A stretch of 61,560 nucleotides of DNA, filler included, from Sluysia triapertura (GCA_046118255.1; 4 parts of 4 records of this genome joined end to end with filler, not necessarily neighbours in it), one strand, 5' to 3'; numbered from the whole stretch's first letter, positions 37,692-61,560 are shown. Translations and numbers: made by a program. The notes: generated by a model from the sequence alone, not told the origin.

Positions 37692-37768
<77 letters not shown>

Positions 37769-37774
37769 TCTAAC

Positions 37775-40700
37775 CTGCACAGATACCAGTACTATAATAT
37801 TAAAAGTAGGAAAATCTTTTAAATAATCCGTTTGAGACCAATATTTTCTTCTTTGAAACAAATTCACCAAACGACGAGTAATAATCAAGTCTTTAACTCC
37901 TATGATTCCTATATAAAGAAACATACCGTACATAGCTGCCATAGGAATGTATTTTAGTGCACTACCAAGAAACACTGATAAGAAAACCAGTACCCCTACA
38001 ACAATACCAGTTATACGCTGTTCTGCTAATCCGATTACTCTAGATAATGATAATTTTTATTATTAATTGTTTTTTCGAAATTTGTTCAGTCTTAATGAAA
38101 AAATGATTACTTCTTGACAGTCGACTAAAATGATGAGTCACAACACATGCCATATGATTAAAGGCTTGTGTAAGTAATGGGTACGGTTTTGCCAACAAAT
38201 ATTTCATTACAGAAGAAAATTGATACTTAACCATTTCAGGGCAGGATCCTTATATCAAATTAAAGATATTGACAAGAGCTTTCATTTAATATCAAATGAG
38301 GATAAACATTTTTGTTCGAAAGAAAAGGATAAAAAAATTAGAAAACCAGTTAAATGCTATGAATTTTTTTTCTACATTCTGGATCTTTATTTCTTCATTC
38401 CATACACTACCTTTGCGAAATTCGGTAAACATTTCATACATGGACTTCAATAAAGAACTAATGGAAAAGTTTTGGCAACCAAAGAGAAATATTGAGAGGA
38501 AGACCATTTTTAGGTTAAGTGGTAAGCATTTTCCATCATTAATCTGGCCTTCAAAACGTTTATATTAAATGTAGTGGAAGTACAAAAGAAAAAAGATGTC
38601 TAATTATTGTAATGTTTGGTTATATTTTACTATATATATCGTACGAAAAATCTTTTAGATGAATAAAAATTGCATTTAAAAATTGCATACACATTTTTAT
38701 GCATTGTTTTACATAAGCAAGTAATTTTTTTCGATGACAGAAATCCAACAAAACTAAATATTAAGTATTTCTACTTATACCAACAAGGGTTAGTCTTCAT
38801 TATGAAGATTTCAAATAAGATCCGTATGTAGATATAGAAAAAAAGTCATATGATAGTAATAATTTCTAGAGTTAAGAAAATATAATTTTAATTTTGAGAA
38901 GATTCTTGAAGATATCCATAAAGACTGATATTATTTTCATGTTTTCTAATATTTTTTCAGAATTTTTGAATACCAGTCACAGACGACTCACATGATTTAT
39001 TTTTGCTAAATCAACAGTTTTAAGAGTATTTTCTACTTTCAATTTGCTAGATGACTGGTCTTTAAATTAGTAAAGTATATAATTCTTTATATAGAACAAA
39101 CTTCAATTTTTAAAAATTTTCAATATTAATATTAAACTAAATAAATCATTTTATACACATTGTGTACATTAATCCTAACGGAGGGCAAATCAATAATATA
39201 AACAATAATATGAAATTGAAAAGTAATTTAAAATTATATAACGTGATTTATATATATATATTATTTACGAAATGTTAGAATTATGTGAATTATTTAACCC
39301 CAAAACAAATTTGCTCTCAATTATACATTTATTTAATAAATAAATGATAAAATATCATCATGGGGATATCAACCTTTAATTTCTTTATTTGAAATTTGAA
39401 ACGTATAATAATTAAAAGTTGCTTAAAAAGAAGAATAAAATAATGAAGATAATAATGTAAATAGAGCAATTAAGTCAATGTTAAAAAGGATGAAAATTAA
39501 TAAAGTTAAGAACATTTTAAAATATTAAAAATATATTTAAGCTACGAATGGCTCGTTTGTATAGTTAGATCTAAAAAGTTTTTTAAAGCAATATGAAAAC
39601 ATAATTTATGCAACATACTTTGGCGGTACACCGGGAGCATTATTAATACTCCATTTACTCATCGCAATACAAAGTGCATTTGTTCTCACCATTGCTCCGG
39701 ATACAAAAGGCCAACCAGTGAATGCGGAGATGATCGGAAAAACAAGCAAAACTAAGAAAAAATTTATCGAAAATAGAACCGGTTTAGTAAGCTTTCGTTC
39801 TGATTTACAAGCACAGATTCTGATAATAATAATAATAATGATAATAATAATTAAAAATAAAAATAAATACAGTGAAATTACTATTATGATTATTTTAAAA
39901 CGAAATAAATCATCAATATTGAGTACTTTATTTTATATTAGCAAACTTATGAAAATTAATTCTTAAATGTTTTGGCAAAAAATCAAAATCCAATTAAATT
40001 AATTAGAAGAATATCAATCGTAAATGATATTTATTACTTATTTTCACGGTACTTTAAACCCTAGGATTGCCAAGAACAAAATGACGTAAATTACAAAGCG
40101 TGAACAAAATTATCCATAATACATATTTCTTTATTTTCAATAAATTGAATATTTAAACACACTCATTACAAATTATTCCCTTTTTTGAATGTAAAAGACA
40201 AACATAATTGTTGCATACTAGAAATTCTTTTAACTTTTTGCTTTTTTCTATCAGAATGTTATTGTTGATACTGCGTTTAAATTTTTCTCTGGGCAAATGG
40301 CTTTGATTCTTCTCAAAATATCCTACACTGTTTCTTCTAACGTAACATTAATATTGAAAAAATTAATTAAAAATTCACGTTTTATGAAGCGGAAATTATT
40401 TTAAATTGTACGAGATATTTATAAAATTACAATAAAAGTTTCAAAACTTCAGCTCAATATGTTTTGTCCGCGCTTGGTAATCGTAGGGTTAAATATTATA
40501 ATCTAATTTGAAATTTTATATTAAAGAAATTAACATAGGTACTGTTTAATATAAGAGTAGTTTATTTGCATCATGGAGTACTCAAGGTTAATGTTTAGAA
40601 CGTGAACAATCATGGGTTATTTTGATAAATTATTTATTATTCAAGAAACGTCCAGATTATATTTTCAAGGTGTAGTTTCCTTTTAACATTGTTCAAACTA

Positions 40701-41260
40701 ATAACTTTAATTATACTGCATTGTGTGTTTAGAAATATTTATTATTTAATATTATTTATTTATTAATTATTATTATTTAATAAGGAAATATTATTATTTA
40801 ATATTTGAACGTTTATTATTTAATAAGGCAATGTGACATTGGTTAAAAAATTAATCAACTAACGAATTTGTGGAAACTTCAGTAAACATTATAAAGAATA
40901 TACTGACAGCGATCGCGAAACAGAAACCGTGTGTTTCACTTGTTGTTTGAACAAGTTTTGAATAGTCCGGTTGATTTAGCCAAAGTGTAAGATTGGTTTC
41001 GTTACTCGGTGGTATATTAAGAGTTGGCATATTGTAAGCGTGAAAAAATATTCGTTCCAAGGCTACTACAAGAATAATACCCAGTGGAACATTGAATGAA
41101 CCAAGCAAATTTCGTATCTGAAAAATAATTAATACATCATAATTTATTAAACATCAGTATATCTTCATTATATGTAATTAATAATATTCTTTCAACAATT
41201 TTCTTTTATTACACAATAACAATATTCTTCAACCTAAGATAGATCATAATCTACAATTTC

Positions 41261-41339
<79 letters not shown>

Positions 41340-42360
41340 TACGTTACTATTGTTTTGCTTAAAGGCTACATACTTCATGTAAAATTGTTTAAAGATTTTT
41401 AAAAATGTCTTAATCAAAATGAAATTCAGTGCTTTATGTAGTAATGACTTTCGCATATATTGAGTTCTACAAAATACGGTGTACCAACATCACTTGCAAT
41501 TAATAACGTTTCTACTAAACGTCCATAAAGTTACGATATATGATAAACAATATGACTGATAATAGTTCTATGTTACAAACACATAGCTATGTCTTGATCT
41601 CACATAAATATTCATATAATATCAAATAATATCACTGCATCAACTGTAACTTATGATTGAGGTCGAAATCGTCCTTAGTTTAAGTCGTGTAATCTTTACT
41701 TTAAGTAAATCATTCATAATCTTAACCAAACTATGAATGTACTGCAAGGAAAATATCTATTCTTTAGTAGACTGAGTTTTTAAATGTAAAACAGTTGAAC
41801 CATTATTTGAACATTTACACTCGTAATTAATCATTAAATACTTTTTCTAAAATGAAATTAAATCAAGTTTTTAACTCTGCAAAATAAGGTAGAAACGAAC
41901 ATTTAAAATTAATACTTGACTGATTATACTGCCTCAAACAACTTGTTAGATATTTACTAAGTTCATTTTCAACAACGTGACCAAATTAATTCAAAATTCA
42001 TTAATTCATTATTTCAAAATTCATCAATATGTTCATTTAAATTAAAATATCATTATATTAACGATACCATAATCAATTAATCGATAATAATAATAAACAT
42101 TATTTTAGTCTCAAAATAATCATTAATACTAACTTGTCGTCTAAAAAATGAGCCTCGTTTTATTTTAATAAGAATCATGCAAAAGTCTATCATTAAAAAG
42201 GCTAAGAATAATGTAGTACCACCAACACCGAACGTTATCCGTTCTTGGTATAATGTAACCATGGATTCAGTAGTAACATTCATTGATGCCACATTAGATG
42301 CCTTATGCGGTAGTCTCTAATAATAATAATAATATTAAGAATAATAATATTAATAATAAT

Positions 42361-42395
<35 letters not shown>

Positions 42396-57166: not shown

Positions 57167-57961
57167 TTAGCATTAAATTATATTCCTATTAAAACATGAT
57201 TATTATGATTATGATTATAGTTTCTATTATCGTTACAATGTCACTTTATTATTCCACAAACAATAGACTTAAATATTCGCACACCTTCACATCATCATAC
57301 CAAAAGAGCATTATCCTCTGTAATTCTTAACAATTAAACGCCCGCATATTTATTTTACTGCCACACGTAAACACATGGCAATCTTTAACAAATTTTAAAA
57401 ACTTAACTTCTTAGAGAAAAATCAGTATAAATTTATGACGTATTCACTTATTAAAGATATAGGTATAAAAAAGGCAAAAATTCATGGACAGTAATACAGT
57501 AATACAGTCATGCATTAATGCAAGGCCGGACGGTTAGATGTTAATAAATAATGCATCATTAATATTACCATTTTAATTTTATTGTTGCTTTTGTTATTCG
57601 AATTTTCTATTTTGAATCCTATAAACTCAACAGTTAATTCATTTCATAACAATTGCAAAGTAAATCTTTTCATATCTTTAATAATGTATTGTTAAGACAC
57701 AAACAATGCAGAGTAATATTTCGGGTTTAGTTTCATATCGAGTTTTGAAATTGGAAAACGATAAATCAGAGTCATTTTTGAACGCATTTAGATTCAACAT
57801 CTAAATGTTTCATACAATGCTCAATATGGTATGAATAATTTTCAGAATTTGAAAATATTATTTTTAGTGACGCAAACATGAATGTAGATAAGTATCGGTA
57901 AAATCTACCGATACAAATTATATAATTATATAATATAAATCTTTTCATAACACAACAAAAA

Positions 57962-57980
57962 TGGTGTCAGGAGTGGGATT
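57962..57980 (+). promoter_or_regulatory. LTR-retrotransposon primer-binding site complementary to the tRNA-Leu 3' end
   Basis: TGGTGTCAGGAGTGGGATT is the reverse complement of AATCCCACTCCTGACA-CCA (mature tRNA-Leu end including the non-encoded CCA). It lies 4 nt after an LTR-like ...TAACACAACA end. Confidence 0.85.
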
Positions 57981-57993
57981 ATTTACTTTCCGA

Positions 57994-58844
57994 TTACATG
58001 TTATATTGAAAAATATTATGGTACGAATTGTAAACACGATTCTCATTATTTTCTTTACTTTCCAATGTGTCATATTTCTGTGGAATTGTTTGGTAATCAT
58101 CTGCACAGAGTAGAGATGTGTTACCTAAGACATAATCATTTACATCGATCATAATATTAACTGAAACTGGAAATGATATTTGTATATTTTGAGATAAAAT
58201 GTAATCGTCATTACTATTTACAATAGATTCCGAATTCACTTATTCATCATAAATTTTAAAGTCTTTGGATAAATTAACACAGATATTGTTCAAGTCTGTA
58301 TTGAGGTCAATTAAATTATTTAGTATTATATCTAAGCCAGATAATTTTAGCGCATCTGAATTAACCCAAGTATTTAATAAAGGTGATCTTATATCCAGTT
58401 TGAAATGTAAATCTTTAATCGATTTTGATAATCCGCATAATGTTTCAAACATTTCAATATCTCTTAGAAGTGAATTCTCAGAATAAATACGATTCAAAAA
58501 TTTCGTATCAAGTTTTAGTGATTTAATACAGCAATTTAATGTTGATTCGTTAATAGCGTGCCGAATCCAAGTTCTACTGCAACCAACATTTGTAATAGGA
58601 TTAGATTATTATCTTCATGCATGTATTCCAAGACATCTTTGGAAATTATGCCTTTTATAACTGTCTAAAATTCATAATCAAAAACCAGCTTGGGTCTATT
58701 AATTTTTCGAAGTTGTTGATGAAGAAATACTGCTTCTATGGCAGAGCATAAATTGAATGTATGAATATAATCGGAGATTTCATGAAGATCTCGATCTTCT
58801 TTATACGTTAATATGGCTTGCATAGTTAACTCCTTTTCAATCAT
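57994..58844 (-). pseudogene. Intronless disrupted copy of a PLEKHM1-type RUN-domain gene (N-terminal part)
   Basis: LCSAIEAVFLH...EF*TVIKGII (TAG at 58665-67 replaces the conserved Trp), frameshift near 58600, then NVGCSRTWIRHAINE...YSENSLLRD...LHFKLDIRSPLLNTW...LKLSGL. Another in-frame TAA at 58240-42. Confidence 0.75.
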
Positions 58845-59070
58845 TTAATTTAACCATTAAATTATCTTTTCTGATGAAATAAAATTGTAAAATTTTATTC
58901 TTTATTAGATTAATGTTATTTTTAGTTACATGAATTTTTTAAACAAATTATACTTTTTTGCATTGGCTGTCAAATATTTTTTAGTAACTGTCTAATTTTA
59001 TACTTTCTCCGATTGGTTGTCAATTAATATTAACTGGGATTAATCAAACTGGGACAGACCAATCGTCTTG

Positions 59071-59132
59071 ATTGGTTGTTCAACCAGAGTGATAAAAATA
59101 ATGCAGAGATTCACTCTGGTTAGACAACCAGT
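59071..59132. other. Conserved 22-bp-stem hairpin / CCAAT-box palindrome, copy A
   Basis: Arms 59071-59092 and 59111-59132, 18-nt loop. The first 19 nt are identical to 61207-61225. Confidence 0.75.
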
Positions 59133-59183
59133 AATAACGCTAATAGAAAATTGATTTGAAAGTGTCTAGTAGTTAATTTCGGA

Positions 59184-59371
59184 TGTAGTTGAACTTCAAT
59201 TGTTATGAAATGAAGAATAAAATATTTTAGATGAATTTTTTAATGTAAATTGATGGTTTTGAATATCATTGTGGTTTGAATGTTGAGATTGTGGATTTAA
59301 ATTAATTTTAGTGGATGTAAAGGAGATAAAATATGATATAAAATTCTCAAAGTGATAGGTTGACCACCACA
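59184..59371. mobile_element. Short LTR-like segment (TGTAGTTG...CACCACA)
   Basis: TG/CA termini and G/T skew. The terminal 17-mer TAGGTTGACCACCACAA recurs at 60033-60049, with a variant at ~30505-30519. Confidence 0.45.
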
Positions 59372-59374
59372 AGA

Positions 59375-59951
59375 TCATTTAAGCTTTTGTTCATATTACA
59401 CGCAGGACTTGATGATGAATGTAAACTATTCAAAATTGACTCACTACTACTTCTATGAAATCGGTCTGATGTAATCGTTGAATAATTATTTTGATTAAGT
59501 CGATAAATATATATAAATATATATTTAGATTTGATATTTAGATTCAGAAGGCACACTTTGCAATCCATTAGCAATAATAGTACAATTTTTATGTACTGGA
59601 TGATATATTACTACATCTGACTTTGATGACAAAAGATACTGCTGTTTATTATGAAATTCAATAACATCTAAGACAGTAGGAAACTTATATTTCCGGTCAA
59701 TGTAATACAGCAACTGATTTTCATTTTTTTTCTGCGTCAATTTTTACTATTGAATGTATAAAAAGTTTATTCCATTTACTTATCACTATAAATTGTTTAT
59801 TTTTATCACTTGAGAAGCGAAGTAAAAATTCACCACTGGACACATTACGCTCTTCTTCATGTTTACGTTCAACTTCACCATGATACCACTTTATATTTAT
59901 CAATAAATCAATTTGCTTTTTAATTTCAGAATCAATGTCTAATATTTTCAT
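59375..59951 (-). pseudogene. Intronless, frameshifted SH2-domain gene fragment (BCAR3/SH2D3- or FES/FER-type SH2)
   Basis: WYHGEVER...SSGEFLLRFSSDKNKQFIVISKWN, frameshift in an A8 run at ~59724-31, then YKFPTVLDVIEFHNKQQYLLSSKSDVVIYHPV. A later frame reads RFHRSSSESIL. Confidence 0.7.
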
Positions 59952-60151
59952 CTAAGAATGAATATGTCTCAATCATTAAAATTTATTTCGGTATCGTTTT
60001 ATGTATAGTGTTGAATTAAAATTCTAAAATTTTAGGTTGACCACCACAAAATACAATAGAAAATGACGAGAATAAAACTAATTATTACCACAAACAAAAT
60101 TGTTATTTGTCTAATGTTTGGAATGAGAGAATTTCATATGTAGGTTAAGAA

Positions 60152-60360
60152 TGTAATGAGATTACAAATATTACATTGTTAAAATTATTAAAATTCTTGA
60201 AACTAATATTTTCTCGACTTAAATTAAATAAAGGTATTACTTTTAAAATTAATATAAAATTTATTGAAATATTAATACCTTTATTTAATTTAAGTCGAGA
60301 AAATATTAGTTTCAAGAATTTTAATAATTTTAACAATGTAATATTTATAACCTTGTTACG
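60152..60360. repeat. 209-bp near-perfect palindrome occupying the LTR position upstream of a PBS
   Basis: Perfect 74-bp arms 60166-60239 and 60273-60346 with a 33-nt spacer. Pairing extends, with G-T and A-C mismatches, out to TGTAA...TTACG. Confidence 0.95.
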
Positions 60361-60364
60361 AAAT

Positions 60365-60383
60365 TGGTGTCAGGAGTGGAATC
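60365..60383 (+). promoter_or_regulatory. Second tRNA-Leu primer-binding site
   Basis: TGGTGTCAGGAGTGGAATC; the first 15 nt are identical to 57962-57976. It lies 4 nt after the palindrome end. Confidence 0.8.
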
Positions 60384-60413
60384 TATGTTAAAACCGAGTC
60401 TTATTACATGCTG

Positions 60414-61041
60414 TTAAGCAGCGGCAAGAACTTTCTTACATAGTTGAGAGTAATCGTAAACTATACTAACAACTATTGGTGGCAAATTTAAATGTTGATT
60501 TAAATCACTAAGGTTAATACGACTCATTATATCTCTTGTTATTGAAATATTCAGTATCTTTTGAGTCATCTCAATTCTATCTTCACTACCTTCAGTTAAT
60601 TCCGTATAAGTTCGCATCATGACTTTATAAAAGGCATCATCTTTTAAATTTGCGGTTAATATTTTAACTTCCAAAGTCGAAAGACATTGAGAAAATATCC
60701 CAATAGAATTGTTAATGCTTAATCCAGCTTTGTTGCAGACACTGTTGATGAGAGTTCTCGGATTACAAACTTCGCGTGTAATTAATTTGAATATACTTTC
60801 GATGTTGTCCAGACGAGTGATGATCAGCTCTAGATTTTGACGAGTAAATTCTAAATTAGTATTATTGTTGATTTGATTTCTCGAATTATAATAAGATTCT
60901 GTTTTAGTTTCAGAATTTCTTTCGTTTTTGATCTCTAATAAAATCTTTACTTTCTATACCATGCAGAACACTGATTACATCATGGATATCTAAAATGAAC
61001 ATTCTAAGTCCACTTTCACTATGTTTAGCTAAATCGTTCAT
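60414..61041 (-). pseudogene. Disrupted intronless ORF: coiled coil plus possible DUF4806/BEN-like domain
   Basis: A ~180-codon stop-free frame 60414-~60954 (LELIITRLDNIESIFK...LKDDAFYKVMMRTYTELTEG...QKILNISITRDIMSRINLS). The nearest ATG (61041) is in another frame. The domain assignment is weak. Confidence 0.4.
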
Positions 61042-61206
61042 GTTTATATATTCCTTTATTAAATTCATCTATGTTCCATTGAGAAAATTTTGAGCCCAAA
61101 TTGTTTTAAGTTTTCACCTTAATTTTTTCTATTATATAAAAACACTAAATTTATTTTTATGAATCAATTAACTACTCTCTCAATACTGATTAGTTGTGCG
61201 TTCGTT

Positions 61207-61269
61207 ATTGGTTGTTCAACCAGAGAAGAAAACAAAAATAGCAATGCTAATTCTAGTTGGACAACCAAT
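61207..61269. other. Conserved hairpin / CCAAT-box palindrome, copy B
   Basis: Arms 61207-61225 and 61251-61269 (19 bp, one mismatch), 25-nt loop. Confidence 0.75.
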
Positions 61270-61560
61270 CAAAGTACTGCAAAGTAATTATAAAATTATT
61301 AAATTAAATGTGTCAAATCAATTAACAAAATTGGCAGTGGTTGTAATAAGTAGTGTTGATACTACTTTGTTTAATTAACTGAAGATTGCTGGCAGCTACT
61401 AAATAATGTGGTGGCACATTGACAATAATCAAAATGGCGATTTCGACAATAAAATGATTAAAATATTAATAATAAAAATCTTTTGTTAAAGAAAAAATAA
61501 ACATAAAGAAAAAAAATGATTTTAATGGATCTAAAAGAATTAAAGAATAAAAGGTTTGGA

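What the first reader, a model, noticed from the sequence alone, without database searches (positions are those of the whole stretch)
57883..61300. Repeated cassette: hairpin LTR, tRNA-Leu PBS, antisense captured gene, conserved hairpin (candidate gene-capturing non-autonomous LTR element family)
Seen: two units ~2.4 kb apart share one order of parts. (1) A TG-starting, self-complementary segment (57883-57957; 60152-60360). (2) Exactly 4 nt, then TGGTGTCAGGAGTGG (57962; 60365). (3) Within ~15-30 nt, a shared CCGA..TTACATG motif and the 3' end of an intronless minus-strand coding sequence. (4) About 170-230 bp upstream of that sequence's ATG, the same hairpin starting ATTGGTTGTTCAACCAGAG. The two cargoes are unrelated (PLEKHM1-type RUN versus DUF4806-like) and no gag/pol is present. 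Established: TGG plus tRNA 3' complement just inside a ...CA end is the PBS of LTR retroelements, and LTR elements can acquire mRNA by template switching. Inference: a TRIM/LARD-like vehicle with constant cis-elements and swappable antisense host-gene cargo.
Basis: partly seen in the sequence, partly recalled or inferred. Interest (0 to 1): 0.82.

Follow-up and report, generated by a model that had tools for sequence, protein, structure and literature searches.

The report
Antisense gene retrocopies with tRNA-Leu sites
Three broken, intron-free copies of host genes lie in a row in an AT-rich animal genome, and two of them abut an 18-base copy of the end of a leucine tRNA, the mark of a retrotransposon's reverse transcriptase. 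This looks like a by-product of retrotransposon copying, not a shown family of gene-carrying elements.

Summary
The main observations hold. The complement of the 3' end of tRNA-Leu(CAG), CCA included, occurs twice on the + strand, at 57962 and 60365, matching 18/18 and 17/18 bases. Each copy lies 17-34 nt from the 3' end of an intronless, disabled minus-strand ORF. A 62-nt hairpin with an identical 19-nt arm lies upstream of each ORF.

Several details do not hold:
- The two "hairpin LTRs" are unrelated to each other, and only the second is a real palindrome.
- I found no second LTR copy, no target-site duplication and no polypurine tract for unit A.
- The CCGA..TTACATG motif is not statistically supported.
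- Cargo B has no detectable homologue; DUF4806 is only a language-model lead.
- A third intronless unit, a Fes/Fer-type SH2 flanked by a 42-nt direct repeat, lies between the two and lacks both the tRNA site and the hairpin.

My best reading is relics of LTR-retrotransposon reverse transcription. DNA ends finishing in the 18-nt copy of the tRNA primer were extended on cellular mRNAs, which gives antisense, 5'-complete gene copies. In unit B that DNA end was probably a snap-back strong-stop DNA.

The conserved hairpin is unexplained.

The parts
57883..57957 (+). Segment just upstream of PBS A, a candidate U5 or LTR end. It starts TG and ends CA. It contains a 9-bp stem hairpin and an AT palindrome. 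Its left boundary is uncertain.
   Evidence: Not similar to the corresponding segment of unit B.
57962..57979 (+). PBS A: an 18-nt complement of the 3' end of tRNA-Leu(CAG), CCA included. Base 57980 also matches.
   Evidence: primer sequence in PMC7229842; probe in PMC3413118.
57980..57996 (+). Junction between PBS A and cargo A. It contains CCGATTACATG, which overlaps the cargo's last codon and stop codon.
   Evidence: Significance is weak.
57997..58844 (-). Cargo A: an intronless copy of the N-terminal, RUN-domain part of a PLEKHM1-like gene. It is disabled by stops at 58665-58667 and 58240-58242 and by a 1-nt frameshift near 58600.
58962..59062 (+). Degenerate extra copies of the hairpin arm motif. 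ATTGGCTGTCAAAT lies at 58962. A weaker hairpin spans 59012-59062.
59071..59132 (+). Hairpin H_A. Its stem of about 20 bp carries CCAAT/ATTGG in both arms.
   Evidence: It is 76% identical to H_B over 67 nt.
59334..59375 (+). Direct repeat R1, on the 3' side of the SH2 copy. Its core is AGGTTGACCACCACAA.
59528..59951 (-). Third cargo: an intronless Fes/Fer-type SH2 domain in two frames. The frameshift lies in or next to the 8-base A run at 59724-59731.
60012..60052 (+). Direct repeat R2, on the 5' side of the SH2 copy. It is 83% identical to R1.
60153..60359 (+). A 207-nt palindrome with 101-nt arms that are 91% complementary; the inner 73 bp are perfect. Its right arm ends 0-5 nt from PBS B. 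It is a candidate snap-back minus-strand strong-stop DNA, with the right arm as R-U5.
60365..60382 (+). PBS B, matching tRNA-Leu(CAG) at 17 of 18 bases.
60383..60416 (+). Junction between PBS B and cargo B, running from the end of the PBS through the cargo's stop codon. It may be the antisense of a short 3' UTR, because AATAAG lies 17 nt from the PBS on the minus strand.
   Evidence: reading of the sequence.
60417..61068 (-). Cargo B: an intronless ORF of about 220 codons in two frames, with a frameshift between 60913 and 60953. It has no detectable homologue. DUF4806 is a weak lead only.
61207..61269 (+). Hairpin H_B.

Best explanation
The block 57883-61270 is a patchwork left by the reverse transcriptase of LTR retrotransposons that use tRNA-Leu(CAG) as primer.

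Proposed steps:
1. In units A and B a DNA strand ended in the 18-nt copy of the tRNA primer. That is the natural 3' end of plus-strand strong-stop DNA. It is also the 3' end of a minus-strand strong-stop DNA that folded back and copied itself and then its primer.
2. Instead of making the normal second strand transfer, this strand was extended on a cellular mRNA.
3. The result is an intronless gene copy in antisense orientation to the PBS. The copy keeps the 5' part of the message and stops a few bases from the PBS.
4. The 207-nt palindrome that ends at PBS B is the folded-back R-U5.
5. The SH2 fragment, flanked by a 42-nt duplication, entered by template switching out of and back into another template.
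6. All three copies have since decayed.

Shown: the PBS; the antisense, intronless, disabled ORFs; the palindrome and its position; the absence of LTR pairs.

Inferred: the order of polymerisation steps; that the segments upstream of the PBS are U5 or R-U5; and how the products entered the chromosome, perhaps by capture at a break.

The conserved hairpin is not explained by this model.
For: PBS:
- It has exactly the 18-nt length copied from a tRNA primer, with the non-encoded CCA, and occurs twice. The 18-nt rule is stated in PMC6088434.

Cargo ORFs:
- They are open for 81-179 codons right up to 17-34 nt from the PBS in a 25% GC sequence.
- Cargo A is the N-terminal RUN part of a PLEKHM1-type protein, so the 5' end is kept and the 3' end lost. 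That is the opposite of LINE-type copies and is what priming inside a message predicts.
- The neighbouring SLC4 gene is split into many exons, so intronless ORFs are not the norm here.
- There is no poly(A) tract at the junctions.

Palindrome and upstream segments:
- The palindrome arms run to within 0-5 nt of PBS B and do not include it. That is expected if the RNA primer was lost from the 5' end of a self-primed strong-stop DNA.
- Self-priming is documented in vitro (PMC6088434).
- The segments upstream of the two PBS copies are unrelated. This fits a recurrent mechanism better than one element family.

Precedent:
- Partial and multi-gene retrocopies joined to LTR-element pieces are known in animals (PMC5131818).
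Against: - The 62-nt hairpin shared by both units has a 19/19 identical arm and sits on the same side of each cargo. This model gives it no role, and it is what a vehicle family would predict.
- Unit A has no palindrome, and its upstream boundary is unknown.
- Extension of strong-stop DNA on mRNA and its fixation in a genome has, to my knowledge, not been described.
- There are only two instances, at one locus.
- The parent genes, the junction microhomology and the donor retrotransposon could not be examined.
- The outer end of the palindrome can be aligned in two ways.
Confidence: 0.4

Rival explanations
1. Units A and B are members of a non-autonomous, tRNA-Leu-primed LTR-type element family (TRIM/LARD-like). 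Its constant cis-elements (terminal segment, PBS, short leader, hairpin) frame a swappable antisense gene that may be driven by the hairpin/CCAAT region.
For: - Both units have the same order and orientation of parts and a similar size, 1.25 and 1.12 kb.
- The hairpins show a constraint-like pattern: the 5' arm is 19/19 identical, the 3' arm 15/19, and the loop is poorly conserved.
- The hairpin motif occurs six times, all upstream of cargoes A and B, and nowhere else in the 24-kb piece.
- The junction motif is present in both units.
- Chimeric retrocopies can go through further rounds of retroposition (PMC5131818).
Against: - Neither upstream segment has a second copy in the piece.
- The upstream segments are not homologous to each other.
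- Unit A has no polypurine tract, and I found no target-site duplication.
- Apart from the PBS and the hairpin, no shared word stands out from noise.
- The junction regions do not align.
- An intronless antisense cargo cannot arise by the usual minus-strand template switch.
- The SH2 unit has neither element.
Confidence: 0.22
2. Chance juxtaposition in a decaying, repeat-rich stretch. Two truncated 5' ends of unrelated tRNA-Leu-primed LTR elements, copies of a short hairpin repeat (MITE-like or miRNA-like) and three old pseudogenes happen to lie together.
For: - The upstream segments are unrelated to each other.
- The hairpins are 76% identical, like old dispersed repeats.
- They resemble miRNA-type hairpins only below the Rfam thresholds.
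- No element boundaries or duplications were found.
Against: - Both PBS copies face the same way and lie 17-34 nt from the 3' end of a long open frame on the other strand.
- All three cargoes point the same way.
- All hairpin copies lie on the 5' side of cargoes and none elsewhere in the 24 kb.
Confidence: 0.2
3. A cluster of small minus-strand genes, or very recent pseudogenes of them, that share a promoter module (palindromic CCAAT boxes followed by TATA-like boxes). The tRNA-like 18-mers sit in their 3' flanks as regulatory or small-RNA target sites.
For: - On the minus strand, CCAAT motifs with TATA-like boxes lie 139-227 nt upstream of the ATGs.
- The frameshifts in the SH2 copy and in cargo B could be homopolymer sequencing errors.
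Against: - Cargo A has two nonsense substitutions as well as a frameshift.
- CCA is not genome-encoded in eukaryotic tRNA genes, so the 18-mers point to reverse transcription.
- Cargo A and the SH2 copy are fragments of larger proteins.
Confidence: 0.1
4. Assembly artefact. The palindrome, or the whole array, results from a chimeric or fold-back read.
For: A perfect 73-bp inverted repeat is unusual and unstable.
Against: - The palindrome is short and has diverged outer and central parts.
- The PBS and hairpin copies differ by substitutions, as real paralogous sequence does.
Confidence: 0.05

Closest known systems
LTR-mediated retroposition (chimeric retrocopies flanked by LTR-retrotransposon pieces; Tan et al. 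2016, PMC5131818; yeast Ty1 retrosequences)
   Same: - Intronless, often partial copies of host mRNAs.
- Several genes joined at one locus.
- Joined to LTR-element sequence.
- No poly(A) tail and no LINE-type duplication.
   Different: - Here the copies are antisense to the element's PBS.
- They begin within 17-34 nt of it.
- No LTR pair or internal retrotransposon sequence is recognisable on the far side.
Self-primed (snap-back) minus-strand strong-stop DNA of retroviruses (in vitro; PMC6088434)
   Same: An inverted duplication of the segment between the RNA 5' end and the PBS, with the arms stopping at the PBS.
   Different: - It is known as a dead-end product in the test tube.
- Here it would be fixed in a genome and extended through the primer copy into an mRNA.
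TRIM / LARD non-autonomous LTR retrotransposons
   Same: - A tRNA-type PBS.
- No gag or pol.
- Small size.
- Possible carriage of foreign sequence.
   Different: - No paired terminal direct repeats.
- No polypurine tract for unit A.
- No target-site duplication.
- PBS for tRNA-Leu. Published TRIMs use tRNA-Met as far as I recall; I did not check this here.
LINE-type processed pseudogenes
   Same: Intronless, disabled copies of host genes.
   Different: - No poly(A) tail and no target-site duplication.
- The 5' end is retained and the 3' end lost in cargo A.
- A tRNA-primer copy lies at the junction.
MITE-like or pre-miRNA-like hairpins (Rfam mir-582, mir-5365)
   Same: A hairpin of about 62 nt with stems of about 20 bp, one arm better conserved than the other, and a poorly conserved loop.
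   Different: - Scores are far below the Rfam gathering thresholds: 39 against 70 bits, and 25 against 84 bits.
- No consistent target-site duplication.

Membership tests
LTR retrotransposon / TRIM / LARD | Primer binding site complementary to a tRNA 3' end, just inside the 5' terminal repeat | tested here: met
   An 18/18 and a 17/18 match to tRNA-Leu(CAG), CCA included.
LTR retrotransposon / TRIM / LARD | Two terminal direct repeats (5' and 3' LTR) | tested here: not met
   Self-BLAST with 9-nt words found no second copy of 57883-57957 or 60153-60359. Unit B's 3' side is cut at 61560, so only 290 nt could be checked.
LTR retrotransposon / TRIM / LARD | Polypurine tract before the 3' repeat | tested here: not met
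   No purine run of 9 or more between 58000 and 61200 on the + strand. The A-rich runs at 61488-61516 are ordinary for this composition.
LTR retrotransposon / TRIM / LARD | Target-site duplication of 4-6 bp and TG..CA termini | tested here: inconclusive
   Unit A's segment reads TG..CA. Unit B's ends in ..TTAC(G). I saw no matching flanks when reading the sequence, but the right-hand ends are undefined.
LTR retrotransposon / TRIM / LARD | Multiple dispersed copies in the genome | not testable with these tools
   Only this 24-kb piece is available. The metagenome, viral and bacterial scans gave only chance hits or none.
LTR-mediated retrocopy (Tan et al. 2016) | Intronless, often partial copy of a host mRNA, without poly(A) or LINE hallmarks | tested here: met
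   The RUN and SH2 copies are fragments with continuous frames and no poly(A) tract. The parent genes were not seen.
LTR-mediated retrocopy (Tan et al. 2016) | LTR-retrotransposon sequence on both sides, with microsimilarity at the switch points | tested here: inconclusive
   Only the PBS side is recognisable as retrotransposon sequence. Microsimilarity needs the parent and donor sequences, which are not available.
LINE-type processed pseudogene | 3' poly(A) tail, flanking duplication, 5' truncation | tested here: not met
   No A or T run at the junctions. Cargo A keeps its N-terminus and lacks its 3' part.
Helitron (gene-capturing) | 3' hairpin followed about 10 nt later by CTRR, inserted between A and T | tested here: not met
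   Unit A has CTAA-T 7 nt after the hairpin. Unit B has no CTRR within 25 nt. The cargoes also lack introns.
Pfam DUF4806 (cargo B) | A match to the family profile | tested here: not met
   No Pfam hit at E up to 1. No hits in the 5.8-billion word search, the 1.84-billion phmmer search or PDB. The only pointer is an ESM-Atlas feature score of 0.89 with 180 of 256 shared features. The fold model was too poor to use, pLDDT 38.
Rfam mir-582 / mir-5365 (hairpin) | A score at or above the family gathering threshold | tested here: not met
   39.4 bits against 70, and 24.6 bits against 84.

The most novel reading that the evidence does not exclude
A route of retrogene formation that has not, to my knowledge, been described. 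DNA intermediates of an LTR retrotransposon that end in the copied tRNA primer are extended on cellular mRNAs and fixed in the genome. These intermediates are plus-strand strong-stop DNA or a folded-back minus-strand strong-stop DNA. The products are antisense, 5'-complete gene copies, and they would leave a natural fossil of a self-primed strong-stop DNA. Alternatively, the two units belong to a replicating family of tRNA-Leu-primed vehicles that carry host genes in antisense behind a conserved hairpin promoter.
Probability: 0.35. Interest if true: 0.75.

Novelty: new variant of a known kind. Interest (0 to 1): 0.55.

Why it matters
LTR retrotransposons are known to copy host mRNAs, and the accepted route puts the gene in sense orientation between element pieces. 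A locus where gene copies start right at the copied tRNA primer and run antisense would show that later intermediates of reverse transcription can also pick up host messages. One copy sits behind what looks like a folded-back strong-stop DNA, and this locus would preserve such an intermediate in a genome. Either reading is directly testable with the full genome.

Tried and rejected
External and protein searches:
- The exact ORFs are not in the protein collection.
- Word searches with cargo B, the RUN piece and an SLC4 exon were all blank.
- The full phmmer search with cargo B was blank.
- A metagenome scan with the hairpin 16-mer returned 120 loci. None had the inverted partner, the PBS or AT-rich context, so they are chance matches.
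- Viral scans for the hairpin and the PBS found nothing.
- The scan of bacterial and archaeal genomes gave one chance hit.
- The cargo B fold was too poor (pLDDT 38) to search with.

Ideas tested and dropped:
- A third, degenerate PBS unit near 57660-57725 is not significant (p 0.30).
- Shared 5' leaders among the three units come down to one 26-nt block between unit A and the SH2 unit (z 4). Gapped alignments are not significant.
- The hairpin as a Helitron end or a TA-flanked MITE has no consistent termini.
- The 42-nt repeat core as a second PBS matches no tRNA I could name, and the match would be only 14 nt.
- No trace of the Hydra spliced leader SL-B1 lies upstream of the cargoes.
- Nine bases of the unit B junction equal the leader's 3' end (sequence). 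I take this as chance.

Organism: not identified. The 25.4% GC content and the DUF4806 lead are compatible with Hydra (PMC7642931), but this is untested.


Full report
Setting. The usable piece, 37692-61560, is 25.4% GC. It carries a many-exon SLC4-type anion exchanger gene on the minus strand, from 37692 to about 45200. Pfam HCO3_cotransp matches, and one exon is about 45% identical to solved anion exchangers. So this is an animal genome with ordinary intron-rich genes. I could not identify the organism. No tRNA gene and no gag, pol or integrase ORF were found in the piece.

What is there. A published reverse primer for human tRNA-Leu(CAG) begins with the same bases (PMC7229842; probe in PMC3413118). 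Unit A matches its first 19 nt, and unit B matches 17 of the first 18. Eighteen bases including the non-encoded CCA is the part of a tRNA primer that pairs with a retroviral primer binding site (PMC6088434). These are therefore real traces of reverse transcription by an LTR-type element.

On the other strand, each PBS is followed within 17-34 nt by the end of a long intronless open frame.
- Cargo A (58844-57997) is the N-terminal RUN domain of a PLEKHM1-like protein plus about 90 more codons. It is disabled by two nonsense codons and one frameshift.
- Cargo B (61068-60417, about 220 codons, one frameshift) has no detectable relative in Pfam, in two very large protein searches or in PDB. An ESM-Atlas feature search puts it nearest DUF4806 clusters at a score that is only a lead. 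A single-sequence fold was unusable.

The hairpin is also real. The 19-mer occurs at 59071 and 61207, each with an imperfect inverted partner, and both fold far better than shuffles. The two hairpins are 76% identical over 67 nt. The 5' arm is identical, the 3' arm is 15/19, and the loop is poorly conserved. Unit A carries further degenerate copies at 58962 and 59012-59062. All six arm motifs lie upstream of cargoes A and B, and none occurs elsewhere in the piece. Read on the minus strand, the arms contain CCAAT boxes followed by TATA-like boxes.

What does not hold. The two "hairpin LTRs" are different things.
- 60153-60359 is a 207-nt palindrome with a perfect 73-bp core.
- 57883-57957 holds only two small hairpins.
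- The two segments do not align (p 0.86).
- Between the units, only the PBS word and the hairpin word stand out from AT-rich noise.
- The CCGA..TTACATG motif is present, but it was defined from these two sequences and its spacing differs. The junction regions as a whole do not align (p 0.46).
- Neither upstream segment has a second copy. Unit A has no polypurine tract, and I saw no target-site duplication.

So the defining repeat pair of an LTR, TRIM or LARD element was looked for and not found.

A third unit. Between A and B lies another intronless minus-strand copy. It is a Fes/Fer-type SH2 domain whose two halves are in different frames, with the frameshift in or next to an eight-base A run. 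It has neither the PBS nor the hairpin. It is flanked by a 42-nt direct repeat that is 83% identical. This is the pattern left when a polymerase switches out of a template and re-enters it a little upstream.

Mechanism. In the usual model of LTR-mediated retroposition, the enzyme switches from element RNA to an mRNA during minus-strand synthesis. The gene then ends up in sense orientation between element pieces (PMC5131818). Here the genes are antisense to the PBS, they start almost at the PBS, and cargo A keeps the 5' end of its message and lacks the 3' part.

That is what one expects if a DNA whose 3' end is the freshly copied 18 nt of the tRNA primer is extended on an mRNA instead of making the second strand transfer. 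Two intermediates end this way. One is plus-strand strong-stop DNA. The other is a minus-strand strong-stop DNA that folds back, copies itself and then copies its own primer.

The second case predicts an inverted duplication of the segment between the RNA 5' end and the PBS, with arms that stop at the PBS and do not include it. The palindrome of unit B fits this. Its arms reach to within 0-5 nt of the PBS, depending on which of two alignments of the outer 15 nt is taken, and complementarity ends there. Self-priming of strong-stop DNA is well documented in vitro. I know of no report of such a product fixed in a genome; that statement rests on my own knowledge and two literature searches.

The unrelated upstream segments of A and B fit a recurring mechanism acting on two different donor elements better than one family. 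I put this reading at 0.4.

What it leaves open. Its conservation pattern looks constrained, and its position relative to the cargo is the same in both units. It might be a promoter module carried by a vehicle, a short dispersed hairpin repeat, or a small-RNA precursor. Its Rfam matches to mir-5365 and mir-582 are far below threshold. Other rivals are a chance juxtaposition of truncated LTR ends, hairpin repeats and pseudogenes (0.2), a decaying gene cluster with a shared promoter (0.1), and an assembly error (0.05).

Limits. No other part of this genome could be searched.
- The metagenome, viral and bacterial scans gave only chance matches or nothing.
- The genome-wide co-occurrence test, the search for parent genes and the search for the donor retrotransposon are the decisive steps, and they remain undone.

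Verdict. The retro-origin is well supported. The claim of a "gene-capturing LTR vehicle family" is not shown, and one of its defining features failed. The locus is an unusual variant of LTR-mediated retroposition and is worth a genome-wide follow-up.

Noticed in passing
37692-45200, minus strand: A many-exon SLC4-type anion exchanger or bicarbonate transporter gene, cut at the left edge of the piece. Two donor sites that I read begin GTTAG. The introns hold long (AAT)n/(ATT)n runs.
   Followed up: partly
59528-59951, minus strand: A Fes/Fer-type SH2 domain copy that is intronless and frameshifted in or next to an eight-base A run. It is flanked by a 42-nt direct repeat (59334-59375 and 60012-60052).
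   Followed up: yes
53331-53923: About 600 nt of imperfect 9-15-nt periodic repeats (GTA/GTT-rich) with very strong GC skew, up to +0.8. This produces long spurious Ser/Val/Thr-rich open frames on both strands.
   Followed up: no
52910-53188, + strand: A 93-codon open frame with a single C2H2 zinc-finger motif (Pfam zf-C2H2, E 4e-4, below the cut-off). It may be an exon or a relic.
   Followed up: partly
61207-61225 and 59071-59089: The conserved hairpin arm shares a 13-nt core (GTTGTTCAACCAG) with the Rfam consensus of the mir-582 family. The covariance score is far below threshold, so I take this as coincidence.
   Followed up: partly
60400-60410: On the minus strand the unit B junction reads ..TGTAATAAG.., which is identical to the last nine bases of the Hydra spliced leader SL-B1 as printed in PMC7986045. 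The GC content (25.4%) and the DUF4806 lead also fit Hydra. The organism is not established and the match may be chance.
   Followed up: partly
58871-58897 and 60008-60034, minus strand: A 26-nt block, identical at 23 of 26 bases, lies upstream of the first ATG of both cargo A and the SH2 copy. In both it is followed by ATGATTGA. Only the ungapped block is significant (z 4).
   Followed up: partly
50100-50700: A very AT-rich stretch (10-15% GC) made of 10-nt periodic TTAATAATTA-type repeats.
   Followed up: no
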